Positions 6,011 through 54,642 of a DNA stretch of 64,000 nucleotides are shown piece by piece. The notes beneath the pieces were generated by a model. The model was given only the letters and a program-made list of their open reading frames with translations, was not told the DNA's origin and made no database searches. Where the stretch lies: IMG/VR virus record IMGVR_UViG_3300032770_000001, positions 391,709 through 455,708 of that record. One strand, 5' to 3'. The translations under genes and the position numbers were made by a program. Position 1 is the first letter of the stretch. Every line of letters begins with the position of its first letter.

Positions 6011-6454
6011 CTAGGCGGGGTTAACAGTCGCAGCCTCAACCTTCGGTGCCAAGTAGATCGAGGCACGAAGCAGGGTCTTTGAATCCTGAAAGACCTGAAG
6101 ACCCTTCTGGCAGTCCGAGCAAATCAACCCATGGACGTGACCATCGCGGTAATCGACCACCGTCTTGCGGTTGTAGAGCACCAACGGGCGTTCGCAGATC
6201 GGGCATTGCTGATTCTGAGTACGCCACATGTTGAGATACTCTCCCGGCTGCATGTTGAACTGAGCGAGAAGGTAGGCGTCCTGAACCTTGACCTTCGTCC
6301 AGAAGGTGCCGCAATAGGCATTGTGGCAGGTTTTGCAGTAGTGGGACTTGCCGGAGGCGGTGCGTTTGTTCTCACCGAAGGCACCTAAAGGCAACCATTT
6401 CTTGCACTTGTTGCACCACTTCTCTTTTTCGTTGAACAGCCGTTTACGTCCCAT
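6011..6454 (-). CDS. Endonuclease VII-like protein, apparently catalytically degenerate
   Basis: N-terminal KWCNKC...YCKTC Zn finger; C-terminal CPIC...VDYRDGHVHGLICSDCQKGL where the family normally has DHDH...RGLLCxxCN. Confidence 0.75.
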   Translation of the reverse strand: MGRKRLFNEKEKWCNKCKKWLPLGAFGENKRTASGKSHYCKTCHNAYCGTFWTKVKVQDAYLLAQFNMQPGEYLNMWRTQNQQCPICERPLVLYNRKTVVDYRDGHVHGLICSDCQKGLQVFQDSKTLLRASIYLAPKVEAATVNPA

Positions 6455-6557: not shown

Positions 6558-7889
6558 ATGGCAACTCCAACACTGGTTTCAGCGGGTTACGGCAACCCGG
6601 TAGTCTACGGTGGGCACATTCAGAACGCTTGGTCAAACAACCAAGGCGACAACATTGTGGTCAGCCCGACCGCTGGCAACACGCTTGTCGTGTTCGTCTT
6701 CGGTTTCCGCACCTACGATCCGTTCAACTTGTTCCACAACACAACTCCGGTTGTCCCGACTGGCTGGTCCGTCGGTATCAACGACATGACTCTGACCCCG
6801 ACGATCACGGACAACTCCGGTGACTCTGTTGCCGTCACGTCCGTCACTGAGACCACAACGGCACTGACCCTGACTGATGTCAACACGGCGGTGGGTGGTT
6901 CGGCAGTCTACGATGGCACCATCACTGGTGGTGCTGCGAACGCTCTGGCTGGCTACAAGTTCCAAGTAGCAGGCTTTACGACCGCAGCCAACAACGGCAC
7001 ATTCCTTTGCACGGCGTCTACCGCGACGAGCTTGACTCTGTCGAACGCAGCCGCAGTTGCCGAGACGCACGCCGCAACCGCGACGTACTCGTCTGTGGCA
7101 CTGACGACCGCGAGCAACAACTTCGGCGTCGGCGACGTAGTCGTTCTGGCTGGCTTTACCACGCAGACGTGGTTGAACGGTCAGTCGCAGGCTGTTGTGT
7201 CTTCCGGCTCGACCTTCAAGGTCAATGACAGCACGTTCCACGCAACCTCCGGTCCGACTGCACAGGCAGCCGCAACCGCAGCCCGTAACTCCGGCAACGA
7301 CTGGGTCACGGTCACTGGCAAGGTTCAGAACGGCGACGTGGATTACACCCCGTCCGGTGTGACCGACTTTACCGTCTCGTCCAAGTGGGACTTGAACGGC
7401 AAGTACCCGTCCGTTATCGCCTACTACGCGACAAACGTTTCGGGCGGCACCTACAACCTGAACGTCAACTCCTGCTATCAGGATGGCACGATCCGCCCCG
7501 GCGATCTCGCGGCTGGCAAGCCGTACTTCGATGGCGGCGTGGACATCCACGTTCTGGAATTCTCCGGTCTGTTGACTTCCGGCATCGGCGATCAGTCCGC
7601 AGGTGCAATGACGGCGTCCAACCCGGCGACGGTTTCTTACACCACGGCGGCGAGCGGCGACCTGATCCTCACGGGCGGTCTCATGAAGAACGGCAACGCC
7701 TTCTCGACCTATGCTCCAGTTGGCACCACGGGCACTTTGATGCTCGCGACTGGCAAGGGCGTAAGCTCGCAGGCTCACTGGGGCATCCAGATGCAGCTTC
7801 AGACTGCGAACGGCGCAATCACCCCCGGCTTTACGAACCCACTGGGTTACGAAATGGCCGTGGTTTCACTCGCACTCAAGCACGCTTAA
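6558..7889 (+). CDS. Virion surface/fibre protein sharing a 73-aa module with the tail sheath
   Basis: 443 aa, T/A/G/S-rich; followed by a strong terminator. Confidence 0.8.
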   Translation: MATPTLVSAGYGNPVVYGGHIQNAWSNNQGDNIVVSPTAGNTLVVFVFGFRTYDPFNLFHNTTPVVPTGWSVGINDMTLTPTITDNSGDSVAVTSVTETTTALTLTDVNTAVGGSAVYDGTITGGAANALAGYKFQVAGFTTAANNGTFLCTASTATSLTLSNAAAVAETHAATATYSSVALTTASNNFGVGDVVVLAGFTTQTWLNGQSQAVVSSGSTFKVNDSTFHATSGPTAQAAATAARNSGNDWVTVTGKVQNGDVDYTPSGVTDFTVSSKWDLNGKYPSVIAYYATNVSGGTYNLNVNSCYQDGTIRPGDLAAGKPYFDGGVDIHVLEFSGLLTSGIGDQSAGAMTASNPATVSYTTAASGDLILTGGLMKNGNAFSTYAPVGTTGTLMLATGKGVSSQAHWGIQMQLQTANGAITPGFTNPLGYEMAVVSLALKHA

Positions 7890-7908
7890 TCCTTCACGGA
7901 TTAGCGCG

Positions 7909-7940
7909 AGGGGCGGCTGATTTGCCGCCCCTTCTTTTTT
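7909..7940 (+). terminator. Rho-independent terminator
   Basis: aggggcggc-tgattt-gccgcccct followed by a T-tract. Confidence 0.85.
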
Positions 7941-8018: not shown

Positions 8019-8777
8019 ATGAGTGAGAATACACCGTACTTCGACAGCATCACATCCGCCCGTGCAATGCTCCTCGATGAGGATGAAGCCCTTCATGGCG
8101 CAACCCTGCTTTCGATGGAGTCCGATCCGGAGTTTGCCCGTGAGCAGAAAACCCTTGCCTACATCCAAGACAACTTCCCATCGTTCCTGAAGTACCTGCG
8201 GGAACTGAAAAAGGAAGATCAGGAATTGCTCCTGAGCTACTACATTCTCGCCAAGACCCAGAACACGCTCGCGGTGATCCACCGCAGCACTCAAACAGTG
8301 TGCAGCTTCCGCATCCGCATGGCCCGCAAGGTGCTGGGAGCCATGATGCTCTGGAACGGCGTGCCGGACGAAACCATCATGAGTCCGATCCTTGCCAAAG
8401 CAGGACTGGAAGACGGTTTGGCTCAGGAGGATGGCACTCCGGTCGCCCTGTCCACCGTGATCGCCATGTACGCCAAGACCCGCAGCTTCCAGAAGATCGC
8501 CGAGGTCTTCAAGCTCCACCGCCCGGACATCCGCCGCGCCATGAGCCGTTCATCCAAGACCTTGATGGAGACCAAGGACCCGGAGCAGCACGCACTGGGA
8601 GCCTACATCCACAGCTTGATCGACAAGGCAAATCCCAGCGGCACCGGATTTTCCAAAAGAAAAGTCTCGAAACTCGGTAATATATATCGTACAGACCCGG
8701 ATATTCTGGGTGAGTTCCGCATCAAAGTGGATGACCCTGAGTTCGAACACATGTTTGTTTCGAGAGCTAACCGATGA
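8019..8777 (+). CDS. Transcription factor with tandem sigma-region-4-like HTH domains
   Basis: LKKEDQELLLSYYILAKTQNTLAVIHRSTQTVCSFRIRMARKVL and YAKTRSFQKIAEVFKLHRPDIRRAMSR resemble sigma-70 region 4. Confidence 0.6.
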   Translation: MSENTPYFDSITSARAMLLDEDEALHGATLLSMESDPEFAREQKTLAYIQDNFPSFLKYLRELKKEDQELLLSYYILAKTQNTLAVIHRSTQTVCSFRIRMARKVLGAMMLWNGVPDETIMSPILAKAGLEDGLAQEDGTPVALSTVIAMYAKTRSFQKIAEVFKLHRPDIRRAMSRSSKTLMETKDPEQHALGAYIHSLIDKANPSGTGFSKRKVSKLGNIYRTDPDILGEFRIKVDDPEFEHMFVSRANR

Positions 8778-9046
8778 ACGATCAAGAGCTTCAGCAACAT
8801 AGATTAGAGCAAGAACGCGAGGATTCGCGCAGACGGTATCGACTCGTATGCATCAAACAACTGTTGGAAAGCGAGGGCGGTCGCGACAAGTTCGCAACCT
8901 CGTTGGCGGAAGTTCTTCGTCGGAAGCCGGAGGCAACTCGCTTCGCAATAACCGAGACTAGGATTGAGGAAACGGTCGAGGCTCTCGGTAGGGAGTATGA
9001 GCAGCGTTTGCGGGATGTTTTTGAAGTTGCAAAAACGAGAATTTAG
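8774..9046 (+). CDS. Small protein carrying an MCP N-terminal-arm-like motif
   Basis: QLLESEGGRDKFATSLAEVLRR vs MCP QLLKTAGGRQKLAASLGPSLRR (13/22 identical by hand); ATGA-coupled to 8019..8777. Confidence 0.75.
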   Translation: MNDQELQQHRLEQEREDSRRRYRLVCIKQLLESEGGRDKFATSLAEVLRRKPEATRFAITETRIEETVEALGREYEQRLRDVFEVAKTRI

Positions 9047-9054
9047 GAGAGAGT

Positions 9055-9237
9055 ATGACACTCGATATGGTCAAAGCAGTGATTGAACGCGCCAGCGTGG
9101 GGCGCACACCCCAAACGATCAAGTCTTCAGTCGGCTTGTCGTTCCCGGAAGTGAACTACATCATCGAACAGTTCCGCCGTGGTCAAAACGCGAAGCAGAT
9201 CACTGAGACGATGAACAAAAAAGGCTTCAAGCTGTAA
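9055..9237 (+). CDS. Small hypothetical protein, possible HTH with an internal duplication
   Basis: 60 aa, RBS AGGAGA; IERASVGRTPQTI / IEQFRRGQNAKQI. Confidence 0.7.
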   Translation: MTLDMVKAVIERASVGRTPQTIKSSVGLSFPEVNYIIEQFRRGQNAKQITETMNKKGFKL

Positions 9238-9248
9238 GGAAATCCTCA

Positions 9249-9257
9249 GTATTGAAT
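9249..9257 (+). promoter_or_regulatory. Putative middle-class promoter element GTATT-N3-T
   Basis: gtattgaat in the intergenic region upstream of 9310. Confidence 0.4.
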
Positions 9258-9309
9258 AGTGTGTCCCTAACGGGCATGTACCAATTTTCAAGATACTGAG
9301 GATAGTTCC

Positions 9310-9807
9310 ATGCGTACTTTTTCTGTTGAACCGCAGTTCAACGACACCGTTGACATGCTTGCCCTAGCCATTGGCTATCTTTCCGAACCAACCCCCAACA
9401 ACTCCATCGGACAAGCGGCGACCGACGCCGAGGCCGAAGCTCTAATCAAAGAGGCTGAGAAAGGCGGTCAGGTCGCTCAATACGTCATCTTCAACCCGCA
9501 AGATTATCACCTATTTCGCTACCGCAATCCGCGTCTCATCCATCACTTCGATTACGAGACACAGCAGCGCCTCGTCCGCCGTGGCATCGTTGGCTACCTG
9601 TGGGGAACCACGGTCGTGCTCGACAAGAATGTCACACGCGGCTATATCGTAGTCAGTGCGGACAGCCGCGAGAATGCGTTGAAGAGCGACAAATCCCTTA
9701 TTGTCGAGATCAGCAAGTTGGAAATTCCGAATCTTTCGATCACTGTGTCGAAAGCGAGTACGGACTGGTCGAACGGGCCATGCCCGGTATCGCAAGATCA
9801 AGACTAG
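9310..9807 (+). CDS. Truncated MCP paralog (A-domain-like segment only)
   Basis: VIFNPQDY...DYETQQRLVRRGIVGYLWGTTVVLDKNVTRGYIVVSAD aligns to MCP VFFNPRDY...DRETQRKLLKTGVMGYLWGATLLQSRKVGYGSIYILAD; RBS GAGGA. Confidence 0.85.
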   Translation: MRTFSVEPQFNDTVDMLALAIGYLSEPTPNNSIGQAATDAEAEALIKEAEKGGQVAQYVIFNPQDYHLFRYRNPRLIHHFDYETQQRLVRRGIVGYLWGTTVVLDKNVTRGYIVVSADSRENALKSDKSLIVEISKLEIPNLSITVSKASTDWSNGPCPVSQDQD

Positions 9808-35205: not shown

Positions 35206-35682
35206 TTAGACTGTCTTATCAACGATGGGCTCAGGGATTTCTACTTTGAGCGGCGGACGCTTGGACTCTTGGTCTTTCAGAGCGAGAGCCTCTTTAAGGC
35301 GCGGAGGGAAGTTCTCCTCCCCCTCGATAACGGTAGGTACGGCCTTCTTGCGTTTCTGTTCAAGTTCCTCTTTAGTCGGCTTGATCGCTTCCTTCTTCGG
35401 CTCCGGCTTAAGATCGGGCTTGAGCTTCGGCAATGAACGCTTCAACATATCAATTACGGCAGGTGCCGGAGGAGCCGGGATCGTCTGCTCGTAGATGAAA
35501 CCGTTCTTGATGAGGGCAGCCATGCCCAAAGAAGTCTGCTGGAGGGTTTTAACGATCTCGCCAGCCCGATATACCGTCAAACGGTGACTCGCGAGTTCAT
35601 GGACCAGAACGTCCCCGGAATTGACCCGGAAATTGAACTCGACGAAGTTGATCGGCGATTTAGCTATGTAGCTCTTTTGCAT
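35206..35682 (-). CDS. Hypothetical protein with Lys/Pro-rich C-terminus
   Basis: 158 aa, GGGAG RBS. Confidence 0.7.
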   Translation of the reverse strand: MQKSYIAKSPINFVEFNFRVNSGDVLVHELASHRLTVYRAGEIVKTLQQTSLGMAALIKNGFIYEQTIPAPPAPAVIDMLKRSLPKLKPDLKPEPKKEAIKPTKEELEQKRKKAVPTVIEGEENFPPRLKEALALKDQESKRPPLKVEIPEPIVDKTV

Positions 35683-36157
35683 CTACAAGGCTCCCTTCTA
35701 TGTAATACTCTGGATTTTCCGCATGAAATTGCAAATATTGCACCAACCCCAGTAACTTGGAGACACTGTCATTTACATGCCCTAAAGCTATGTTGCACCC
35801 TCCACATAAAACCCCTCGCTTTTTACCCGTTTTGTGATTGTGATCGGAGTGACCCCCACCGCTGGGAAGTTCCTTACCGCAGCCGGGATTCGCGCAACGG
35901 TAGTCCTGCGCCTTTAATTGTTTCTCACGGTCCGCCTGCTTTCTTTTCGTTTGTTGCCGCGATACTTCTCGTTGCTTCCCTAATATCACTTCTTTATTGG
36001 CTTCATAGTAATTGCGTGCCGCTTCTGAATCATGAACACGAGGTTGTCCCTGACCGCAGAGACGACAGCGAGAATACACTTTACCGTGGTCTCGAACCTC
36101 AACCATGTTTTCAGGGGTTAAAGGATGAAGTCTGTTAGAGCACAATTCAACGGACAT
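35660..36157 (-). CDS. Endonuclease VII-type homing endonuclease
   Basis: CANPGC...SDHNHKTGKKRGVLCGGCNIALG; AT-richer than its neighbours. Confidence 0.85.
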   Translation of the reverse strand: MSVELCSNRLHPLTPENMVEVRDHGKVYSRCRLCGQGQPRVHDSEAARNYYEANKEVILGKQREVSRQQTKRKQADREKQLKAQDYRCANPGCGKELPSGGGHSDHNHKTGKKRGVLCGGCNIALGHVNDSVSKLLGLVQYLQFHAENPEYYIEGSLVDAKELHS

Positions 36158-38895: not shown

Positions 38896-39855
38896 TTAGT
38901 TCTCGCCGTAGTTGGCGGTCGAGTTGAAGCGACCATTGACCGTAAGACGCTGCACGCCGGACGGGTTGAACACGAGGAAGCCGAGGTTCTCGAAGATCGA
39001 GAAGCCGATCTGACGGAGGTCAGGACGGTCGGCGCTCATGACCGTGAGCGGAATACGCTCTGGGATAACGCCGAGGAACTCTGCGTCCGCCAGAATGTAG
39101 ATCGAGCCGTAGCCGACCTTACGCGACTGGAGGAGCGTTGCGCCCCAGAGATAGCCCATCACGCCCGTTTTCAACAGCTTGCGCTGTGTTTCGCGGTCGA
39201 TGTTCTGTTGGGTCCACTTCAACAGGTCCGTGTAGTCACGGGGGTTGAAGAAGACGAACGCGACTGAGAGGTCATGACGCTGCACCTGACCAAAGCCGTC
39301 TGCCATCGAGTTGATGTCAATCGGAGCGTTGATCGGAATGTCAGGGTTGTAGACCGGATCATTCGAGTTCTTACCCGCTGCGCTGTTCGCGACACCGTCA
39401 AACAGAACGAACACGTATCCGTCTTCGGCTGCGCCCACTTCGGCTTTCGCCAAGTTCAGTGAACGAGCAACCAAGTCGAAACGGCGCTCTTTGATCTGCG
39501 TGATCGGGATCATCGGATTGGACACGATTTCGAACGTCGGAACCGTGACGCGCTTCGGTTTTGTAACGCGGACGATGTCACCACCTTCTTCGCCGACGAT
39601 GAATGCTTCGACGAAGGACGAACCCGGAGTCGAGCCAACGGTCATCGCGTTGACATCGAATTCCTTGTCGTAGATGGGCAGTGCGCCATCCGGAAGAGTT
39701 TCGACCATGAGAGCCTTGCGAGCAATGCTCATATAGTCACGGCGACGACGCAGGGACGGACCGAGCGAAGCCGCAAGCTTCTGACGCCCACCCGCCGTCT
39801 TCAAAAGTTGGCCGAGCATTTGCGTCTGCTGTTGTGTGCGAGAAAGTTGTGCCAT
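38896..39855 (-). CDS. Major capsid protein (HK97 fold)
   Basis: 319 aa; gene order protease-scaffold-decoration-MCP-terminator; DYMSIARKALMVETLPDGALPIYDKE, VPTFEIVSNP, GFSIFENLGFLVFNP; GAGGAG RBS. Confidence 0.9.
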   Translation of the reverse strand: MAQLSRTQQQTQMLGQLLKTAGGRQKLAASLGPSLRRRRDYMSIARKALMVETLPDGALPIYDKEFDVNAMTVGSTPGSSFVEAFIVGEEGGDIVRVTKPKRVTVPTFEIVSNPMIPITQIKERRFDLVARSLNLAKAEVGAAEDGYVFVLFDGVANSAAGKNSNDPVYNPDIPINAPIDINSMADGFGQVQRHDLSVAFVFFNPRDYTDLLKWTQQNIDRETQRKLLKTGVMGYLWGATLLQSRKVGYGSIYILADAEFLGVIPERIPLTVMSADRPDLRQIGFSIFENLGFLVFNPSGVQRLTVNGRFNSTANYGEN

Positions 39856-40437: not shown

Positions 40438-40537
40438 GCTGATTCCTCCACCTTGAGTTTTGGTTCAGTTGAGCAGTTTGAATTTGCCGTTCCCAATCCG
40501 GCCTGTGTTCGCAGGCTAAAGGACTATAGGACAGCGT

Positions 40538-40559
40538 GCTCAATAAAGAGGCAGGTAGT
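40538..40559 (-). promoter_or_regulatory. Putative late promoter of the decoration-MCP operon (ACTAC-N12-TGAGC)
   Basis: Bipartite motif about 100 nt upstream of 40437. Confidence 0.55.
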
Positions 40560-40631
40560 GAAAAAACCCAATTACTTGCGAAAAAATTATTTCGATGGGA
40601 TTTCTGCTATAATTTTCAGGTATTTACCGAT

Positions 40632-41093
40632 ATGAGTGTCTCCACAAACAGACGCCGTCTGAGAGAGCAAATCTTCACTCTGCTCGGCAATCGCTGTGTC
40701 GGGCCGGATTGCGGGTGGATTAACGAAGACGGGACTCGTGGGTGTACCGATATCCGATGCCTTCAAATTGACCATAAAAACGGCGGCGGACATCAAGCAG
40801 TTCTCAAAGCCGGAAACAACTACGAGCATTTGAAAGAAATCTTACGAGACCCAGAAATTCACGAACACTATCAGCTTCTCTGCGCCAACTGCAACTGGAT
40901 CAAACGACATCTGAACAACGAATTCAATCGCAAAGGAACTCGACAATCGACCGAGCGTCAACTTCGTATTCGAGACATGATTTTAGAACGACCTGATCTC
41001 ACTCAAGCGGCTATCGGAGAGATTTTCGGCATCAGCCGGGTATCGGTGTACCACATATCCAAAAAGTTTGGAATCCAACCCACCAAGCAATGA
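40632..41093 (+). CDS. HNH-type homing endonuclease with C-terminal HTH
   Basis: LQIDHKNGGG...YQLLCANCNWIK; LTQAAIGEIFGISRVSV; TGcTATAAT at 40605..40613. Confidence 0.85.
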   Translation: MSVSTNRRRLREQIFTLLGNRCVGPDCGWINEDGTRGCTDIRCLQIDHKNGGGHQAVLKAGNNYEHLKEILRDPEIHEHYQLLCANCNWIKRHLNNEFNRKGTRQSTERQLRIRDMILERPDLTQAAIGEIFGISRVSVYHISKKFGIQPTKQ

Positions 41094-41752: not shown

Positions 41753-44008
41753 TTAGAACTCTTCGCTGCCGAACAGCGCGGTTGCAATGTCCACAGGCTT
41801 CGGCGAAGCGACGACCGGGCGAACACGCTTAATGCTGCCCTTCTTCTCGTCCTTCTTCTCTGATGCCGCCTTTGCTGACTGTTTCGGAGCCTGCAATTCC
41901 GGACGTGCATCTTGAGGAGTGCGCTTTGCGCCCTGCTCTTCAGGCTTGATGTCCTTCATTGCTTCCGCGAACAAGTCCTCATCGTGATCGGTGTCGTTGT
42001 CGCGTGCTTCCGAACCGTCCTGCTTGAAGTGGTTCGCCGCGTCAACAAACGCCTCGACCACGTCTTCGCCTTCAACGCTGGTTGCCGTTTTGTTGTCAAC
42101 CGACGCCATCAGGCTGGCAAGCGGATCATTTTCCGAGCCCTGAACTGTGAAGTAGTCCTCGATTGAAGCGACTTGCATACCGCTGTCTTCGAGTGCTGCT
42201 TCCATCTGTGCCGCCGAGGTCGGTGCGAAAAAGTCTTCCGCAGCCATGTGCTCGACGCTACCGTCGCCTTCGTTTGCAAGAGCCGAAACTTTATCGTCCA
42301 TTGCACCCTCATCAAATACGGACGAAAGGTCAAGCTCGCCCTCTGCCGGGCCTTCAGTCTCTTCGAGCGAAATTTCTTCCTCGCCTTCCAACGGAAGAGC
42401 AGGCTCTTCCTCGGACTCTTCGAGAATTTCCTGTTCGAGTGCCTTGATCGCTTCCTCGGCTTCCTCGATCTTTTCCTGCACGACCATCTTCTTCTCGTCG
42501 GTCAGGATTGCACCAGCGGCTTCCTCAGGCGGTGCGCCTGCATCGCCAGCCGGAGCTTCTGCCAACGGATCGCCCGGTGCTTCAGGAGCAGGCGGTGCGT
42601 CTGGAGCCGGAGCATCGACCGGAGCTTCCGCTGCCGGATCGTCTGCGACTTTCTGATCTGCGCCCTTTACTGGAGGAGCAGGGAGATCGGCCTTCTTTTC
42701 GGCAGCAGCTTTCTTCTCTGCGGCAGCCTTGCACTCAGGGCAATCACCAGCACACTTGCCGTCCTTGCCATGAGCAGTCTTCGCGGCAGCCTTCTTGCTG
42801 TCGCCTTCGGAGAGGTTCACGGTCTGACCCGGCTTCTCACCAGCGTCCGGACGCTCGGCGGCTTTACCCGCTTCGAGTTCCTTCGGCTCAGTGTGCTCAC
42901 CGCCGCCGCAACCGCGACCATCGTTGTACGTGCCTGTCTGTGGACCTGCATCCTTGCGGTCGTCGGCAGTCTTCGCGGCTGCTTCTTTCGCAGAACCATG
43001 AAGTTCCTTTTCGACGGCGGCACGCTCAGACTTGAGCACGGACGGGTCTTCAAGATACTGATTGAGTTCGGTCTTGTGGACTTCTTTGAACTGTTCAGCA
43101 AGGTGGGTGGAGTGAGCGTTCTTTGCGGTCTGACGGAGGGCGGCGACGAGAGTCTTCGTGTCATTGCCATCCAGCAGCGATGTCGCGAATGCTTGACGAC
43201 GCTCGACGGAGGCTGTCGGCAACATCGTGTTAGCGATGGTATACGCCGCAGCCGTGCGAATCTGTGCTTCTTTCTTGATAGACTCGCGCTGTTTCTTTGC
43301 CTCAGCGAGCTTCTCTTTCAGATTCGCGGGCTTGGTAGCAGTCTGATTTGCCATGGTAGAGCCTTCCTTTTTCATGTCAGAACGGGCAGAAACGCCCTTC
43401 TTTAGAGGTACTTGATAGTTATTTTTCTTGCTAATTGGAGCTTTTGCACTAGCAAGGGGTGCTTCCAGAGGGGCTGCTTCCGCAGCCGCATCATCTGTGG
43501 GAAGTGGTTCTGCCGCCCCAGCCGCGCCGTCAACCGGGGGCTCAGGGGTAGCTGCCGGAACAGCAGCTTCAGGGGCAGGAGGGGGTTCCGGTGCCGGGGG
43601 TGCTGCCGGAGCGGAAATGCCAAGATCGGGTGCCGGGGGTGCCAGCGGTGCTGCCGGAGCAGCCAAGGGATCGATAGCGGGTTCACCGCCAGATGCGTCG
43701 GCGATCTGCGAATCCAGACCATCCAAAACGGACTTGATCTCTTCCGACCACGGTCCGCCCTTGAACTTTTCCCACTCACCAATCAATTGCACGCCTTCGC
43801 GCATGTGACGAATTTCTTCTTCGAGTTCTTCGCGCTTCTGGGAGAGGAGGTCGAATTCCGGCGATGGGCCGAGATCAGTGGGTGCGTCGGGAGCCATCTC
43901 AGGCATACCCATAAGCTGGTCGTCCATGCCGTCCAGCAGGGCTTGTTTACGAGCGATTTCCGCCGCTACGTGTGATTTGATCTGTGCAACTGTCTTCGGT
44001 TTTGCCAT
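41753..44008 (-). CDS. Prohead scaffold/core protein
   Basis: 751 aa, acidic, Pro/Ala-rich, coiled coils; many K-x-A motifs (KEAAAKTA, KKAAAKTA, KKAAAEKKA, KVA, KTAT); lies between protease and MCP. Confidence 0.8.
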   Translation of the reverse strand: MAKPKTVAQIKSHVAAEIARKQALLDGMDDQLMGMPEMAPDAPTDLGPSPEFDLLSQKREELEEEIRHMREGVQLIGEWEKFKGGPWSEEIKSVLDGLDSQIADASGGEPAIDPLAAPAAPLAPPAPDLGISAPAAPPAPEPPPAPEAAVPAATPEPPVDGAAGAAEPLPTDDAAAEAAPLEAPLASAKAPISKKNNYQVPLKKGVSARSDMKKEGSTMANQTATKPANLKEKLAEAKKQRESIKKEAQIRTAAAYTIANTMLPTASVERRQAFATSLLDGNDTKTLVAALRQTAKNAHSTHLAEQFKEVHKTELNQYLEDPSVLKSERAAVEKELHGSAKEAAAKTADDRKDAGPQTGTYNDGRGCGGGEHTEPKELEAGKAAERPDAGEKPGQTVNLSEGDSKKAAAKTAHGKDGKCAGDCPECKAAAEKKAAAEKKADLPAPPVKGADQKVADDPAAEAPVDAPAPDAPPAPEAPGDPLAEAPAGDAGAPPEEAAGAILTDEKKMVVQEKIEEAEEAIKALEQEILEESEEEPALPLEGEEEISLEETEGPAEGELDLSSVFDEGAMDDKVSALANEGDGSVEHMAAEDFFAPTSAAQMEAALEDSGMQVASIEDYFTVQGSENDPLASLMASVDNKTATSVEGEDVVEAFVDAANHFKQDGSEARDNDTDHDEDLFAEAMKDIKPEEQGAKRTPQDARPELQAPKQSAKAASEKKDEKKGSIKRVRPVVASPKPVDIATALFGSEEF

Positions 44009-44904
44009 TAGCGTATTAGCCTCCCGCGTAAATCGGCGTTGAGTAAAGCTTCCCCCAAATCAAGGGTCTCGAAATCATTATTTTTACTGGCAATTTTTGT
44101 AAGCTTTGCGATCTTGCCAGCCCCAGCCGCTTTGGTGTATGGAGATTTGGGACCGATCCATACCTCGCCGCCCTCGATAATGTTGCGTTTCGAGGCTCCG
44201 GGGAACGCTGGGGTCGCAACCCAAGAAGCTTCCACGAACTTCACACCGCCGTTCGGCAACGTCTTGTGACCGCAGAGTTCAGCGATGCGACGGGCGATGC
44301 CGTCTTCGTCCGGAAGGAAAGTGCCCTTCTGGTACGACAGATGATTGCAATAGGTGCTTTGATCGGTGACATGGGTGCCGCAATAAGAGCAGATCACCAG
44401 ATCGGTGACGCAACCCATCGACAGATAGCGAACTTCCTCGTTCTTGATGTCCTCAATCAGTTTCTCGTGTCCGAGATCGGTAGCGACGAGGATATCGACG
44501 AAGTACACCCAAACTTCGTTGCCGACAACGTGCACCTTACGAAGCTGGGAATCCAGAATGTGCCCTTTGGCGTACTTGCTGTTCTGGTAGTGCTCAACGA
44601 AGTTGAAGGCACCAGTGAAACTCTTGTGCGAAAGCTTTATGACCTCGTTCGTCCATGCGTCATCGTTGTTGTTGACAAGATGCGCAGTCTCCGGCTTGAT
44701 GAGGTAGTCGTAAGGATCGTGCTCAGTCATCACGCTCGCCATGATGGTGCAATGCGAAAGCATGTACCGGGAATTGTCGGCGGCGATTTTGATTTCCGAC
44801 GCTTGCTTGTGACCGAAGGCACGATTGCCATACATCAACTGCCAGTCGTTGGCAGAGACAATGGGGTCTTCGATAAGCGCGTTGGCAAACTTCTTGAAAG
44901 GCAT
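44008..44904 (-). CDS. Prohead maturation protease (assemblin/HK97-type Ser protease with Zn-finger insert)
   Basis: NNNDD, FVEH (His), LSMGC (Ser), CSYCG...CNHL, FVEASWVATPAFPGA. Confidence 0.85.
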   Translation of the reverse strand: MPFKKFANALIEDPIVSANDWQLMYGNRAFGHKQASEIKIAADNSRYMLSHCTIMASVMTEHDPYDYLIKPETAHLVNNNDDAWTNEVIKLSHKSFTGAFNFVEHYQNSKYAKGHILDSQLRKVHVVGNEVWVYFVDILVATDLGHEKLIEDIKNEEVRYLSMGCVTDLVICSYCGTHVTDQSTYCNHLSYQKGTFLPDEDGIARRIAELCGHKTLPNGGVKFVEASWVATPAFPGASKRNIIEGGEVWIGPKSPYTKAAGAGKIAKLTKIASKNNDFETLDLGEALLNADLRGRLIR

Positions 44905-50703: not shown

Positions 50704-53700
50704 TTATGCATTGTTCAAGTTCGTGTTGACCGTGAAGACCACGCTCACATACAGCAAGCTGAAGAGCGGCTGGTAAGTCACAGTAACGTCTGCCTGCGTC
50801 GGATCGACCGGGTCTTGCACGACCGACAGGCTCTTGTAACCAGCGATGATCTGCTGATCCACCAAGCTCTTCAGGCGAGCATTGCAAACCACCTGAATGT
50901 CTGTGGTGAGCGAGTCCAGCATCTTGCGACCGATGAACTGGTTGAGATCGCTGCGGAACACCTGAGCCACGTAGTCAGAGATCGTGGTCGAAGTCGGCTC
51001 GGAAGTGAGCGGGTTCGACGGATCAGTGGACTTGTAATGGCGAATCTTGAGCGAACCATTGTTGTCCAAGATGCAGGTTAAGCCGTCCGCTGCCATCAGG
51101 TCCATCGTCGGATCATCGTACTTGATGAACAGGCGGGTGAACCCAACCAAATTCTGGAACGTCAGCGTGGTCGCCACGTCGTTCGCCGGGTTGCAGTTCA
51201 AACCAGCCATTGCCGCTGCGATGAACTCGCCGGAGACCGGGTACTCGACTGTCACACCCGTGGACGGGTTGGTGATGTTCACACCGGACAGCGGGGTGCC
51301 GATGGCGATGATGCGCTTGTTGGCGATGCTGCGTGCCGATTGACGCATCGAAGCCGGAGTTGCGAACTGATCGTAACCGATGAAGCCGATAGCCTCACCC
51401 TTGTTGCGGATCGTCGCCTGACTCGTCAGGAAGCGGCTGAGGTACTGTTGAACTGTCGGGCTGGTGCTCAGCGGAACGATAACGTTCGCCTTGCTGCTGC
51501 TACCCGGCAGCGCAGTTGCCAGAGACGCGATTGCGTTGATGTAGTCCTGATCGGACGCCTGATTGGTGCCCGGAACCACAGGAACCTGAATGACGCCGAA
51601 CAACTGCACACCGTTCTGCGACATGAACTGGATGCCCAGCGAAACGCGGTTGACCGTGTTCGGCTGACCATACACAGCGTATGCGTCGGCAGGGTTGGTG
51701 TACATCTGGATCGCGTAGTCGGCAGCCGTCTTGTTGCGCGTGTAGCTGACGTAGTAGAACTCGCCCACGTTCGGATCGTTGCCGGACTTCACGAAGGTGC
51801 TCACGATCACCGTATCGCCAGCGGTCGAACCGTAGTTCGATGACACAATCGTCCAAATACCGGGAATCGCAATGCGGTTGTTAGACTCAGCCGGAGCAGT
51901 TCCCGGATTGCCGCAGTGACGGATCGCTGCATTTGCGCCAGTGGCGTCTGCCTTCACAATGAAGTTCAGCACGTCGCCGACTTGGAAGTTGTAGCTCGCC
52001 GGGATGCTCGGCACGCCGTAAGCGGCGTGATCGGCAGGATTGACCACCGTGATGCGGAAGCCAGTGACCTCGTCCTCGTAAGTCTGATCGAGGTAGCCGA
52101 TTGCGGTGCCCTGTGAACCGGAACCCTTTGAATTGGTCGAAGTGACCGTGTAGCTGTGGGTGACCGGAGTCGTAACCGCATCATGGCCGCTAGCCAGCGG
52201 AGTTGCCGCCGTGGTGCTTGCCTGACCGGAGGTTGTACCCGAAGCCACGCATACGATCTGACCGCCGCTGATGGTCTCAGCAGACGGGAACCATGTCTGG
52301 ATCACAGCCAGAGTGTTAGCAGTAGCGTTGCCGTTCCAGTTGGCGTAGATCGTGACCACGTCGCCGACCACGCTCACCGGGATCGCGTTGAGGCTCGAAG
52401 CATCGATTGCGATCTGAACGTTGTTGCCATTTGCACCCGGCGTTGTTGCCGTGAAGGTCAGAGTGCCTGCACCCTGAACGATAGCGACCGAAGCCGGGAC
52501 CGCAGGAGAGATAACGTTTGTACCGTCATTGTTGAAAGTCAGTGTGACCGTTTCATCAACTGCCGCACCAGCTTGCGCCTGAATGTCAGGGAAGTTGAAC
52601 GGATAGACGATGCCAGTCGCTTGGAAGGCTGCGTTCTGCGCAACCGTCGCACTTGCGAAGGTCACCAGCGGCATAACGCGCTGGAGTTCGTCGGAGATGA
52701 TGAAGGTGCCGTTGCCAGCGTAACCGGGCTGAACAACCTCGACCGTATACTGGTGGTCTGACAAGCGGCTACGGTAGTAGCTCGCCCACACACCCACAGG
52801 TTCGAGTGGCTGATTGCTGACGCTCGTTGACGGTGCCGGAGGATTGAACAGAGTTACAGTCTGTGCTGCACCAGCGAGACGGGCAACCTTGACTGCGCCG
52901 TTGAGGAACGCGGTTAGAGGATCGCTGCCGACGTAAACCTGAATCAGGCTGACATCGTCAGTTTCGACTGCCTGTCCGCTGCCATCCACCGGAACATCGG
53001 GGATGGAGTAAACTGTGTTCTTACCGTTGACTGCGCCTGTCAGCGGTTGCAGGTAGACCTTTTCGTCAGCGAGAGTTGCGTTAATCTCGGACGGGGTGAA
53101 GTTCGCCTGCTCGCCAGCGGCAGAGATGTCGATAGCTTCCGTGACATAGGAGCCCCACTGCACTGTGCCGTTACCAGCGGAGTCCTTGCCGAGCACGTAA
53201 TCAGTGCCCTGAATGAAGTCTGCACGATCCGGGCCGAGACCGACAAGCGTGATTGCTTCCACATTGGAATCGGGGAGCAGATCGAACGTGTTCGGCCACG
53301 TGTTGAAGTAGTAGCTGATCGTCAAGGAAGAGGTTGTGCCGCCCTGTGCCGTGGTAGGAGGCACGGGACTCGCCAGTGTGACGAGACCATGCTGACCGTC
53401 GAGCGATGCAACCGTTACCGGGTTGCCATTCAGTTCAACAGTCACCTTGGTGACATCGGTTGTCACGACGCCGCCGTTGGTGCCATCGACCACCGGGGTG
53501 TGTGCGACCTTGAAAACTGTGTTGCTGTTCTGACCGGAACCACCTGAGTATGCGACCGATGCGCCTGCCGTCAATGCCTGCGTTGGCGCTGTCGAAGTAC
53601 CTGCGGTAAGGAACCCGCCGTCCAGCGTCGGGATGCCAGCCGCGATCAGAGTGATGAGGCTTGCAACCGTGCGGAGCGTGCCGTTCGCGTTGCGGATGTT

Positions 53701-54642
53701 GATCGTGACCGCATCCGAACCTGCCCCGCTGACCGCCAGAGCATCAACCACACCGCCCGTAGCCGAAGCTGCGGTCGCGGCATGAGTCTCAATTACCGCG
53801 TTGGCGTTCGCCAAGGTAAGGGTCGTGATGCTCGAAGCAGTGCAAAGGAAGGTGCCGTTGTTTACGGAGTTGGTGAAGCCGGAGACCGTGAAGACATATC
53901 CGGCGAATGCGTTAGCGGCACCGCCAGTGATCGTACCCGTGTAGACTGCGCTCGAACCAACCGAGGCCGCAACCGAAGCCAGCGTGAGGCTGACCGGGGT
54001 GCCGCTATCCACAAGCTGGATCGTAACGAGATTGCCTGTTGCGCCGGGGGTGGAAAGACCGAGAGCGAGAATGTTGCCGCTCTGCGTCTGGGTCAGTGCA
54101 CCGCTGGAATTGACGTACAGGGCCGCTGTGACCGGAACCTGATAGAGCAGGCTTTCCGGCACGTTGTAGGGAGCCACACCACCCACACCGATAAAGGTGT
54201 CGCCACGTTTGAAGAAGTAGTCGATGGTGAGTTCGGTGCCCTGCGGGATGATCTGCTGTGTGCTGAACTGACCTGTTGCACCGTTGAGCGAGATCACTGT
54301 AACTGGGAAGATGTTGCCTGACGAATCAACAGCCTGAACTTGAACCTTGCTCGGATCGTTTGTGACGGTGCCGTGTCCAGTACCGTCTGTGACCGGGAAA
54401 TAGGTCGTCTGGAAGTTGCGGGTCAAACCCGTGACTTGAGGCGTGATATTTTCGTTGACCGCTTCATCATCCTGCACCGCAGAGGAACCACGGAACAACT
54501 CGACGTTGTTCACTGCGAAAAATTGCTGACCCTCGCCAATGATGACGGGTACACGCTGCGTTCCATTCGTCGGAGCCGCGTTCGTCTGAATAATAGTCTG
54601 CGTGTATACTCCGGGCGGGGCATACGATGTAAACAGTGCCAT
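50704..54642 (-). CDS. Contractile tail sheath protein (large, with inserted domains)
   Basis: N-terminal YAPPGVYTQT; C-terminal sheath domain (IAAAMAG, IRHYKSTD, FIGRK, VTVTYQPLFSLLYVSVVF). Confidence 0.92.
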   Translation of the reverse strand: MALFTSYAPPGVYTQTIIQTNAAPTNGTQRVPVIIGEGQQFFAVNNVELFRGSSAVQDDEAVNENITPQVTGLTRNFQTTYFPVTDGTGHGTVTNDPSKVQVQAVDSSGNIFPVTVISLNGATGQFSTQQIIPQGTELTIDYFFKRGDTFIGVGGVAPYNVPESLLYQVPVTAALYVNSSGALTQTQSGNILALGLSTPGATGNLVTIQLVDSGTPVSLTLASVAASVGSSAVYTGTITGGAANAFAGYVFTVSGFTNSVNNGTFLCTASSITTLTLANANAVIETHAATAASATGGVVDALAVSGAGSDAVTINIRNANGTLRTVASLITLIAAGIPTLDGGFLTAGTSTAPTQALTAGASVAYSGGSGQNSNTVFKVAHTPVVDGTNGGVVTTDVTKVTVELNGNPVTVASLDGQHGLVTLASPVPPTTAQGGTTSSLTISYYFNTWPNTFDLLPDSNVEAITLVGLGPDRADFIQGTDYVLGKDSAGNGTVQWGSYVTEAIDISAAGEQANFTPSEINATLADEKVYLQPLTGAVNGKNTVYSIPDVPVDGSGQAVETDDVSLIQVYVGSDPLTAFLNGAVKVARLAGAAQTVTLFNPPAPSTSVSNQPLEPVGVWASYYRSRLSDHQYTVEVVQPGYAGNGTFIISDELQRVMPLVTFASATVAQNAAFQATGIVYPFNFPDIQAQAGAAVDETVTLTFNNDGTNVISPAVPASVAIVQGAGTLTFTATTPGANGNNVQIAIDASSLNAIPVSVVGDVVTIYANWNGNATANTLAVIQTWFPSAETISGGQIVCVASGTTSGQASTTAATPLASGHDAVTTPVTHSYTVTSTNSKGSGSQGTAIGYLDQTYEDEVTGFRITVVNPADHAAYGVPSIPASYNFQVGDVLNFIVKADATGANAAIRHCGNPGTAPAESNNRIAIPGIWTIVSSNYGSTAGDTVIVSTFVKSGNDPNVGEFYYVSYTRNKTAADYAIQMYTNPADAYAVYGQPNTVNRVSLGIQFMSQNGVQLFGVIQVPVVPGTNQASDQDYINAIASLATALPGSSSKANVIVPLSTSPTVQQYLSRFLTSQATIRNKGEAIGFIGYDQFATPASMRQSARSIANKRIIAIGTPLSGVNITNPSTGVTVEYPVSGEFIAAAMAGLNCNPANDVATTLTFQNLVGFTRLFIKYDDPTMDLMAADGLTCILDNNGSLKIRHYKSTDPSNPLTSEPTSTTISDYVAQVFRSDLNQFIGRKMLDSLTTDIQVVCNARLKSLVDQQIIAGYKSLSVVQDPVDPTQADVTVTYQPLFSLLYVSVVFTVNTNLNNA

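What the first reader, a model, noticed from the sequence alone, without database searches (positions are those of the whole stretch)
8774..9046. Second MCP piece nearby: N-terminal arm motif in a 90-aa protein
Seen: QLLESEGGRDKFATSLAEVLRR vs MCP QLLKTAGGRQKLAASLGPSLRR (13/22). The MCP's KTA is replaced by ESE, which would remove a putative protease site. The gene is coupled to the tandem-HTH regulator and lies two genes before the A-domain-like fragment, in the same order as in the MCP. Inference: an old MCP duplicate split into separately retained mimics, or a shared binding epitope.
Basis: partly seen in the sequence, partly recalled or inferred. Interest (0 to 1): 0.68.

Follow-up and report, generated by a model that had tools for sequence, protein, structure and literature searches.

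The report
Small phage protein copying capsid N-arm
A soil megaphage carries a conserved 90-residue helical protein whose core was copied from the N-terminal arm of its own major capsid protein and kept similar by selection, so it is probably a molecular mimic of a capsid contact; its partner is unknown.

Summary
ORF 8774-9046 (+) encodes a 90-aa protein. Its residues 18-54 match residues 5-41, the N-arm, of the major capsid protein (MCP, 38896-39855, -).

- **Not chance.** No shuffle out of 5000 reached the score. A profile built only from MCP N-arms ranks this ORF as the best non-MCP hit in the 455.7-kb genome (E 6e-5). hhalign gives E 2e-6.
- **Conserved gene.** A 58%-identical homolog (P0129) sits in the same gene order in a diverged relative. 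It keeps the motif as its most conserved block and is closer to the MCP there. dN/dS is about 0.23.
- **Old similarity.** Third codon positions are randomised, so the likeness is held at protein level.
- **Accessory location.** The gene lies in a variable cassette island just after a conserved Q/sigma-like regulator. The island also holds a small HTH-like gene and a second MCP-derived gene (9310-9807).
- **Recurrent theme.** An unrelated family of small N-arm-bearing proteins occurs in this genome and one relative.
- **Fold.** AlphaFold2 gives a confident four-helix protein with no known structural match.

Best reading: an exapted MCP piece acting as an N-arm mimic. "One duplicate split in two" is plausible but unproven. 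The "lost protease site" idea is unsupported. Partner and function remain inferred.

The parts
8774..9046 (+). P0001: 90-aa accessory gene. Predicted four-helix protein carrying the MCP N-arm-like segment.
   Evidence: ORF and translation. Homolog P0129, 58% identical, in conserved synteny. dN/dS about 0.23. AF2 pLDDT 94 with helices 3-32, 36-50, 53-71, 73-88.
8825..8935 (+). N-arm-like segment (aa 18-54): end of helix 1, SEGG turn, helix 2.
   Evidence: BLASTP. MCP-only N-arm HMM, E 6.3e-5. hhalign E 1.9e-6. No shuffle of 5000 reaches the score. Codon positions 1 and 2 are 59% identical to the MCP and position 3 is 27%.
9008..9043 (+). Second conserved block of the family (aa 79-90, C-terminal helix), with no MCP counterpart.
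   Evidence: 11/12 residues identical between P0001 and P0129.
8019..8777 (+). P0005: 252-aa Q/sigma-region-4-like regulator. Core gene of the clade; its stop overlaps the start of P0001.
   Evidence: PF06530 Phage_antitermQ E 1e-5, 25.9 bits against a cut-off of 26. Weak sigma-70 hits. Present in 14 of 17 related records at 57-73% identity.
9055..9237 (+). P0004: 60-aa small helix-turn-helix-like protein between the two MCP-derived genes.
   Evidence: ORF. Homologs follow the regulator in L111 and in G006, G010, G011 and G014. The HTH character is judged from the sequence only; no family hit.
9310..9807 (+). P0003: 165-aa protein with an MCP A-domain piece.
   Evidence: BLASTP against the MCP, E 4e-13. 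Five homologs at 60-64% identity, most with a Cys-rich insert. ESM Atlas structural neighbours of homolog P0131 are all HK97-fold MCPs.
9478..9663 (+). A-domain-like segment of P0003 (aa 57-118), matching MCP 199-257.
   Evidence: hhalign probability 98.7%, E 4.7e-16, 59 columns.
38896..39855 (-). Major capsid protein (MCP1), HK97 fold: the source of both pieces.
   Evidence: phrog_2522, 7e-42. 70% identical to the Tunturi_5 major head protein. PDB 6WKK phage G gp27, E 1e-52.
39733..39843 (-). MCP N-arm residues 5-41, the template of the mimic.
   Evidence: Aligned range. Highly conserved among MCPs from this clade out to phage G.
7908..7933 (+). Terminator-like hairpin that closes the upstream unit. 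No terminator-like site on the + strand lies inside 8019-9807.
   Evidence: 10-pair stem with 8 G-C pairs followed by a T-run.

Best explanation
Shown. 8774-9046 is a real accessory gene under purifying selection in a 455.7-kb soil megaphage. The phage's MCP is 70% identical to that of Tunturiibacter phage Tunturi_5. The gene encodes a compact 90-residue, four-helix protein. Residues 18-54 (end of helix 1, a Gly-Gly turn, helix 2) are homologous to residues 5-41 of the phage's own major capsid protein, the N-arm. This segment resembles this lineage's MCP more than distant MCPs. The likeness is ancient and is held at the amino-acid level, because synonymous positions are randomised. The gene is the first cassette in a variable island directly after a conserved Q/sigma-like regulator. 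The island also holds a small HTH-like gene and a second MCP-derived gene.

Inferred. The protein works as a molecular mimic of the N-arm. It presents the N-arm helix-turn-helix on a stable helical body. It would then occupy whatever site normally receives the MCP N-arm: a neighbouring capsid subunit, the scaffold or protease in the prohead, or a host factor that recognises the capsid protein. That would modulate or compete with capsid assembly, or decoy a capsid-recognising factor. Its patchy distribution suggests a conditional, conflict-type or tuning role rather than a core assembly role. The partner is not identified.
For: Homology. Real gene: the homolog P0129 is found only by the exhaustive HMMER search, gene order is conserved in L098, and dN/dS is 0.23 against 0.16-0.38 for neighbours. 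Selection on the mimicking part: identity between P0001 and P0129 is 19/24 in the motif core and 10/24 in the middle of the protein. P0129 is closer to the MCP than P0001 is (51.5% over 33 aa, E 5e-7). Third codon positions are 27% identical. Independent second case: the 164-aa ORF of G001 (L089:1492-1986) is 24/37 identical to its own genome's MCP N-arm, yet only 8/24 third positions agree at the conserved residues. Its homolog in this genome (L002:6952-7191, 79 aa) lies two genes upstream of a second MCP paralog. Source lineage. Fold: AF2 pLDDT 94, ESM Atlas model pLDDT 0.82. Accessory island.
Against: No binding partner is shown. The co-fold with the MCP gave no answer. The N-arm-like segment is predicted to be part of a packed helical bundle, not a free arm, so it may not be available in the way the MCP arm is. 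That model rests on only 3 sequences. MCP-invariant residues D40, Y41, R46 and K47 are not kept in P0001, so only half of the N-arm signature is mimicked. The gene is missing from 17 of 17 related IMG/VR records, two of them rated complete, and from Tunturi_5, LR745208 and phage G. It is therefore dispensable for assembly. No expression data could be obtained.
Confidence: 0.5

Rival explanations
1. Exapted helical module with a function unrelated to capsids. The N-arm piece was reused simply as a helix-turn-helix building block of a small regulator-associated protein, for example a partner or anti-factor of the upstream Q/sigma-like regulator P0005 or of the small HTH-like protein P0004.
For: The stop/start overlap with the regulator occurs here and in L098. 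The unit has regulator-type neighbours. The segment is buried in a confident helical bundle. A second conserved block (aa 79-90) has no MCP counterpart.
Against: The regulator occurs at 57-89% identity without any P0001-like gene in L111 and in 14 related records. Free reuse does not explain why two unrelated small-protein families both keep MCP-like residues over saturated synonymous divergence.
Confidence: 0.25
2. Anti-defence decoy. The island is an accessory counter-defence locus: variable small genes beside a conserved small HTH gene, as in acr-aca loci. P0001 and P0003 would be non-activating mimics of MCP epitopes that blunt a host sensor of capsid protein.
For: The cassette slot is variable and the P0004-like HTH gene is its most widely kept member. 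Distribution of all MCP-derived small genes is patchy. Similarity to the MCP is maintained by selection.
Against: No host sensor is known for these Acidobacteriota phages. A faithful mimic would be expected to trigger rather than block a sensor. There is no hit to known systems apart from a weak PADLOC Cas11e match that the homolog lacks.
Confidence: 0.12
3. Decaying relic of a duplicated MCP gene: the ORF is leftover N-terminal coding sequence with no function of its own.
For: Two MCP pieces lie in N-to-C order only about 260 bp plus one small gene apart. The genome also keeps a full second MCP paralog, so MCP duplication does happen here.
Against: The ORF is intact in genomes whose neighbouring proteins are only 51-73% identical. 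dN/dS is 0.23. The motif and the C-terminal block are strongly conserved. The predicted fold is confident and independent. No frame-shifted MCP remnants lie around it.
Confidence: 0.05
4. Chance or convergent similarity of two basic amphipathic helices.
For: The segment is short (37 columns) and rich in L, R, K and A.
Against: No shuffle of 5000 reached the score. The MCP-only HMM gives E 6e-5 for P0001, 4e-8 for P0129 and 2e-8 for the G001 ORF against all genome ORFs. The homolog is closer to the MCP than P0001 is.
Confidence: 0.03

Closest known systems
SaPI1 CpmB, which mimics the C-terminus of the 80alpha scaffolding protein (Dearborn et al. 2017, eLife, PMC5644958)
   Same: A small helical accessory protein carries a short segment copied from a capsid-assembly protein. 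It is thought to act by occupying that protein's docking site.
   Different: CpmB copies the scaffold C-terminus, which binds the MCP N-arm. P0001 copies the N-arm itself. CpmB is encoded by a satellite and acts against a helper phage, whereas P0001 sits in the phage's own genome. There is no sequence relation, and binding is not shown here.
Full-length MCP paralogs such as T4 gp24 (vertex protein, paralog of gp23); from my own knowledge
   Same: A duplicated capsid gene is retained for a specialised role. This genome also has a full second MCP paralog.
   Different: P0001 keeps only about 37 of about 313 MCP profile columns and lacks the HK97 fold.
HK97-fold MCP of Bacillus phage G (gp27, PDB 6WKK) and Tunturiibacter phage Tunturi_5 gp334
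   Same: They are members of the MCP family that donated the segment. The N-arm signature (G-R, L-A, R) is shared.
   Different: These are complete capsid proteins. Neither genome holds an N-arm small protein.
acr-aca type anti-defence loci (variable small genes beside a conserved small HTH regulator); from my own knowledge
   Same: The locus is a variable cassette slot with a widely kept small HTH-like gene.
   Different: No anti-defence activity or target is known. The HTH assignment is by eye only. The upstream 252-aa regulator is a core gene.
T4 Gol peptide of gp23 recognised by the Lit protease; from my own knowledge
   Same: A short stretch of an MCP acts as a recognisable epitope outside the capsid lattice.
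   Different: Gol is part of the MCP itself, not a separate gene. It triggers host defence rather than being a phage-encoded copy.

Membership tests
HK97-fold major capsid protein (phrog_2522 / PF25209 Phage_capsid_4) | Complete fold of about 280-320 aa with N-arm, E-loop, P-domain and A-domain | tested here: not met
   P0001 has 90 aa. Only profile columns 5-41 of 313 align. The model is all-helical. Pfam gives no hit and PHROGs only weak hits to two families of unknown function (E 0.045 and 0.27), none to a capsid family.
HK97-fold major capsid protein (phrog_2522 / PF25209 Phage_capsid_4) | N-arm segment homologous to that of family members | tested here: met
   MCP-only N-arm HMM E 6.3e-5. 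Full MCP HMM E 0.0012 for P0001, 7e-6 for P0129. hhalign E 1.9e-6.
P0001/P0129 small-protein family (not described before, as far as these searches show) | 76-90 aa; conserved LL-x-[ST]-E-G-G-R-D-K-F-A-T-S motif and a conserved C-terminal block; position directly after the Q/sigma-like regulator | tested here: met
   Alignment A2. Synteny in L098-L101. Only members among 1.84 billion representative proteins: P0007, P0129 and a spurious repeat protein.
Phage scaffolding protein | Gene between the protease and the MCP; long, charged, helical protein | tested here: not met
   P0001 lies about 30 kb from the head module. The 751-aa charged protein at 41753-44008 next to the protease (phrog_18299) fits the scaffold description better.
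Assembly-interface mimic (CpmB-like mode of action) | Carries a segment copied from an assembly protein | tested here: met
Assembly-interface mimic (CpmB-like mode of action) | Binds the partner of the copied segment | tested here: inconclusive
   Complex prediction of MCP with P0001 returned 'no answer', score 0.01. This is evidence neither for nor against binding.
acr-aca-like anti-defence locus | Variable small genes next to a conserved small HTH gene | tested here: met
   Cassette content differs among G000, L098, L111, G010 and G006/G011/G014, while the P0004-like gene recurs.
acr-aca-like anti-defence locus | Demonstrated inhibition of a host defence system | not testable with these tools
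   No host or defence system is available. PADLOC gives no supporting hit.
Cas11e (Cse2/CasB) small subunit | Significant profile match shared by family members | tested here: not met
   P0001 alone scores E 4.6e-4, 19 bits. P0129 has no hit. Foldseek and VIA-align give no supporting structural match.
Pseudogene or relic of an MCP duplicate | Relaxed constraint, disrupted frames | tested here: not met
   dN/dS is 0.23. ORFs are intact in diverged genomes.

The most novel reading that the evidence does not exclude
This megaphage clade repeatedly turns pieces of its own capsid protein into separate genes that selection keeps MCP-like. At least four such gene families appear here, besides a full-length MCP paralog with a Tat export signal: P0001/P0129; the 79/164-aa N-arm family; the P0003 A-domain family; and a Tat-signal A-domain fragment in G003. 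The most novel reading is that these form a 'self-mimicry' tool kit, serving as decoys or competitors for factors that read the capsid protein. Such factors could be host immune sensors, rival co-infecting relatives, or an assembly checkpoint tied to the adjacent late regulator. Some of the proteins would act outside the cytoplasm.
Probability: 0.2. Interest if true: 0.85.

Novelty: new variant of a known kind. Interest (0 to 1): 0.6.

Why it matters
Capsid proteins are usually seen as fixed structural parts. Here a short, functionally critical arm of an HK97-fold capsid protein has been copied into small stand-alone proteins. Selection then held them similar to the original long after synonymous sites saturated, and this happened in two unrelated small-protein families. 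That is the signature expected of molecular mimicry of a capsid contact.

If a partner is found, it would define a phage-encoded way to tune, poison or disguise capsid assembly. It would also give a handle on what the N-arm of phage-G-type capsids binds. A cultured relative with a near-identical N-arm (Tunturi_5 on Tunturiibacter psychrotolerans) makes the idea testable.

Tried and rejected
- **Co-fold of MCP with P0001** (complex prediction): verdict 'no answer' (score 0.01, controls not run). Not used as evidence either way.
- **AF2 of P0003 with 9 sequences**: pLDDT 38.7, unusable.
- **Fold searches with the P0001 model**: Foldseek against PDB and BFVD found nothing at E <= 0.001. VIA-align wide gave a best Z of 6.0, generic helical matches only. 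The ESM Atlas structural neighbour DUF7696 (TM 0.53/0.63) has no sequence support.
- **PADLOC Cas11e hit**: found for P0001 only, absent in P0129; rejected.
- **P0130** (2135-aa repeat protein, E 1e-7): the match is to a repeated PE-x-TFFDI-x-ET unit outside the N-arm motif core; judged spurious.
- **L143**: a picorna-like RNA-virus polyprotein that shares only the EGGRDKF word; a chance hit, not pursued.
- **Phage GenBank collection**: no P0001 relative. P0003 hits only the Tunturi_5 MCP. IMG/VR pattern scans for P0003 found nothing.
- **Residual MCP similarity in the flanks** (P0001 55-90, P0003 1-56 and 120-165): none above shuffles.
- **A DNA- or RNA-level shared element** between the two genes: none.
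- **Tunturi_5 gp310**: weak P0003-profile hit (E 8e-4), not confirmed by hhalign (probability 4.6%).
- **L001 and P0006/P0007**: the same phage at 98-100% identity; uninformative.

Full report
**What is there.** The window is the last 64 kb of a single 455,708-bp virus contig. Its major capsid protein (MCP1, 38896-39855, minus strand, 319 aa) matches phrog_2522 'major head protein' at 7e-42. It is 70% identical to the major head protein of Tunturiibacter phage Tunturi_5, a 309-kb phage of an Acidobacteriota host, and 34% identical to gp27 of Bacillus phage G. The solved structure of gp27 (PDB 6WKK) matches at E 1e-52. ORF 8774-9046 (+) encodes 90 aa (P0001). Its ATG overlaps the stop codon of the upstream 252-aa gene (ATGA at 8774-8777).

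**Is the similarity real?** The quoted 22-mer is 13/22 identical to MCP residues 16-37.
- BLASTP extends the match to P0001 18-65 against MCP 5-52 (17/48, pairwise E 1e-6).
- In a six-frame search of the window with the MCP, this is the third hit after the MCP itself and the 9310-9807 gene. It scores E 0.002, against 0.11 for the best chance hit.
- In the whole genome, P0001 finds the MCP N-terminus at E 0.001.
- None of 5000 shuffles of P0001 reached its Smith-Waterman score: 69 against a mean of 27.6, sd 4.1, maximum 52.
- A profile built only from the N-arms of five diverse MCPs (MCP1, the second paralog of this genome, Tunturi_5, uncultured phage LR745208, phage G) was searched against all 8908 stop-to-stop ORFs of the genome. 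P0001 came first after the two MCPs, at E 6.3e-5.
- With the extended N-arm profile, reversed-sequence decoys reached only E 0.077.
- hhalign of the P0001 family against an MCP alignment gives probability 89.6%, E 1.9e-6, over columns 18-54 and 5-41.

**Homologs and selection.** The word-indexed search of 5.8 billion proteins found only near-identical copies. The contig L001 is the same phage at 99.8%. The exhaustive HMMER search of 1.84 billion representatives found one diverged homolog, P0129 (76 aa, 58% identical). It occurs on four contigs.

In the 6-kb contig L098 the gene order matches the window: endonuclease VII (minus strand), a 443-aa protein, the regulator (71% identical), P0129, an unrelated 88-aa gene, then a homolog of the 165-aa gene (52% identical). 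P0129 is closer to the MCP than P0001 is: 51.5% over 33 residues, E 5e-7 against the window.

Between P0001 and P0129 the motif core (aa 29-52) is 19/24 identical and the C-terminal block (aa 79-90) is 11/12 identical. The middle of the protein (aa 55-78) is only 10/24 identical. dN/dS is about 0.23, like the neighbours at 0.16-0.38, with synonymous sites near saturation. Against the MCP, codon positions 1 and 2 are 59% identical and position 3 is 27%. There is no nucleotide-level repeat. The likeness is therefore old and maintained at protein level. It is not a recent copy or an RNA element.

**Structure.** AlphaFold2 with the three-sequence alignment gives pLDDT 94 and pTM 0.76, with helices 3-32, 36-50, 53-71 and 73-88. 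The ESM Atlas model is also confident. The N-arm-like segment is the end of helix 1, the SEGG turn and helix 2. No solved or predicted structure matches beyond generic helical bundles.

**Neighbourhood.** A strong terminator-like hairpin at 7908-7933 precedes the unit, and no terminator-like site on the + strand lies inside 8019-9807.
- The 252-aa protein P0005 scores just under the Pfam cut-off for Phage_antitermQ (25.9 against 26 bits), with weak sigma-70 region-4 hits. It is a core gene, present in 14 of 17 related IMG/VR records at 57-73% identity.
- What follows P0005 varies. In this genome it is P0001, P0004, P0003. In L098 it is P0129, an 88-aa gene and a P0003-like gene.
- In L111 the regulator is 89% identical and is followed by a P0004-like gene and a P0003-like gene, with no P0001.
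- In G010 it is a 51-aa gene, a P0004-like gene and a 63-aa gene. In G006, G011 and G014 it is the 51-aa gene and a P0004-like gene.
- In G001, G002, G005 and G008 nothing related follows.

P0001 is therefore an accessory cassette, not a core assembly gene.

**The other MCP piece.** P0003 (9310-9807) aligns to MCP 199-257 over its residues 57-118 (BLASTP E 4e-13; hhalign probability 98.7%, E 5e-16). It has five homologs at 60-64% identity, most carrying a Cys-rich insert that P0003 lacks. The nearest ESM Atlas structures to its homolog P0131 are all HK97-fold capsid proteins, aligned over residues 1-164. My own AF2 model was too poor to use.

Both pieces score best against this lineage's MCP1/Tunturi_5 type rather than against LR745208 or phage G. 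This fits a local MCP copy as the source. A single split duplicate is the most economical origin for two collinear pieces in one island, but it is not demonstrated:
- the flanks keep no MCP similarity;
- the intervening gene is swapped between genomes;
- P0003-like genes occur without P0001.

**A recurrent theme.** The N-arm profile finds a second, unrelated family.
- In relative G001 (463 kb), a 164-aa ORF (L089:1492-1986) starts with a segment 24/37 identical to that genome's own MCP N-arm. Only 8 of 24 third codon positions agree at the conserved residues.
- Its homolog in this genome is a 79-aa ORF (L002:6952-7191; BLASTP E 1e-9). It lies two genes upstream of a second full-length MCP paralog (43% identical to MCP1).
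- Across 17 related records plus Tunturi_5, LR745208 and phage G, no other N-arm small proteins were found.

Two independent families that keep MCP-like residues through saturated synonymous divergence are the main argument that the likeness itself is selected, as expected for mimicry.

**Mechanism.** Shown: homology to the N-arm, purifying selection focused on the N-arm-like block, an independent compact fold, and accessory status in a variable island coupled to a regulator.

Inferred: the protein competes for, or occupies, the site that receives the MCP N-arm. In other HK97-fold phages the N-arm contacts neighbouring subunits and the scaffolding protein; the 80alpha/SaPI1 case is in PMC5644958, found. 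Candidates in this window are the MCP itself, the 751-aa highly charged protein next to the protease (41753-44008), and the protease (44008-44904, phrog_18299). A host factor that recognises the capsid protein is an alternative target.

The single co-fold job (MCP with P0001) gave no answer. P0001 does not keep the MCP-invariant D40, Y41, R46 and K47. Only the first half of the arm is therefore mimicked.

**The protease-site idea.** P0129 has KTE where the MCP has KTA and P0001 has ESE. Phage G's MCP itself has ETE at that position. The change lies within the family's normal variation, and nothing here shows cleavage.

**Verdict.** This is an MCP-derived, selection-maintained small protein, best read as an N-arm mimic, in an accessory island that also holds an A-domain-derived gene. 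The single-split origin and the protease argument are not established. No described family contains it. The closest known mode of action is the CpmB-type interface mimic. Function and partner need experiments.

Noticed in passing
Genome C1:273651-274748 (L002:7652-8749), outside the window: A second full-length HK97 MCP paralog (43% identical to MCP1) begins with a textbook twin-arginine (Tat) signal: RRNFLRG, a hydrophobic stretch, then TWA before the N-arm. The start is a TTG preceded by AGGAGG. Pfam TAT_signal scores E 0.0014, below its cut-off. The paralog is absent from relatives G001-G005. An exported capsid-protein paralog would be very unusual.
   Followed up: partly
L096:1285-1776 (relative G003, C1:125061-125552): A 163-aa ORF has a Tat-like signal (RRGFLNG, a hydrophobic stretch, TLA) followed by an MCP A-domain piece. 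It scores higher against MCP1 than its E-value against P0003 suggests, so it may be a separate MCP-derived fragment family.
   Followed up: partly
L002:6952-7191 (genome C1:272951-273190) and L089:1492-1986 (G001): A second family of small proteins (79 and 164 aa) has an MCP N-arm-like N-terminus and a shared LQEAA-x-R-x-G helix. The G000 member lies two genes upstream of the Tat-signal MCP paralog, next to a DUF4326 gene.
   Followed up: yes
Window 8019-9807 and loci L098, L111, L133-L142: The slot after the conserved Q/sigma-like regulator is a variable cassette island. A roughly 60-aa HTH-like gene (P0004 type) is its most widely kept member, an arrangement reminiscent of acr-aca loci.
   Followed up: partly
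Window 6558-7889 (+) and 50704-54642 (-): A homolog (L098) of the 443-aa protein upstream of the regulator matches a roughly 63-aa segment inside the 1312-aa protein at 63% identity (tblastn hit at 53788-53976). This suggests a repeated module in putative fibre-like proteins.
   Followed up: no
Window 6011-6454 (-) and 35660-36157 (-): There are two endonuclease VII-type genes (phrog_2633, phrog_2914). An ORF at 40536-41093 (+), lying between minus-strand head genes, has an HNH-like Cys/His pattern by eye but no Pfam hit. These look like homing-endonuclease-type insertions.
   Followed up: partly
P0003 family (P0131, P0132; L090:1234-1812): Most homologs of the A-domain-like protein carry a Cys-rich insert of about 30 aa (CxxC ... 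C ... C, zinc-ribbon-like) where P0003 has an acidic helical stretch.
   Followed up: no
L152:2084-2944 (Tunturi_5 gp310): There is a weak match of the P0003-family profile (E 8e-4) to the N-terminus of a 286-aa hypothetical protein. hhalign against the MCP did not confirm it (probability 4.6%).
   Followed up: yes
L090:650-1010 and L114:970-1400: In G005 and in contig L114 the P0003-like gene is preceded by a region whose overlapping ORFs look like translated tRNA genes. It may be a tRNA cluster; no tRNA scan was run.
   Followed up: no
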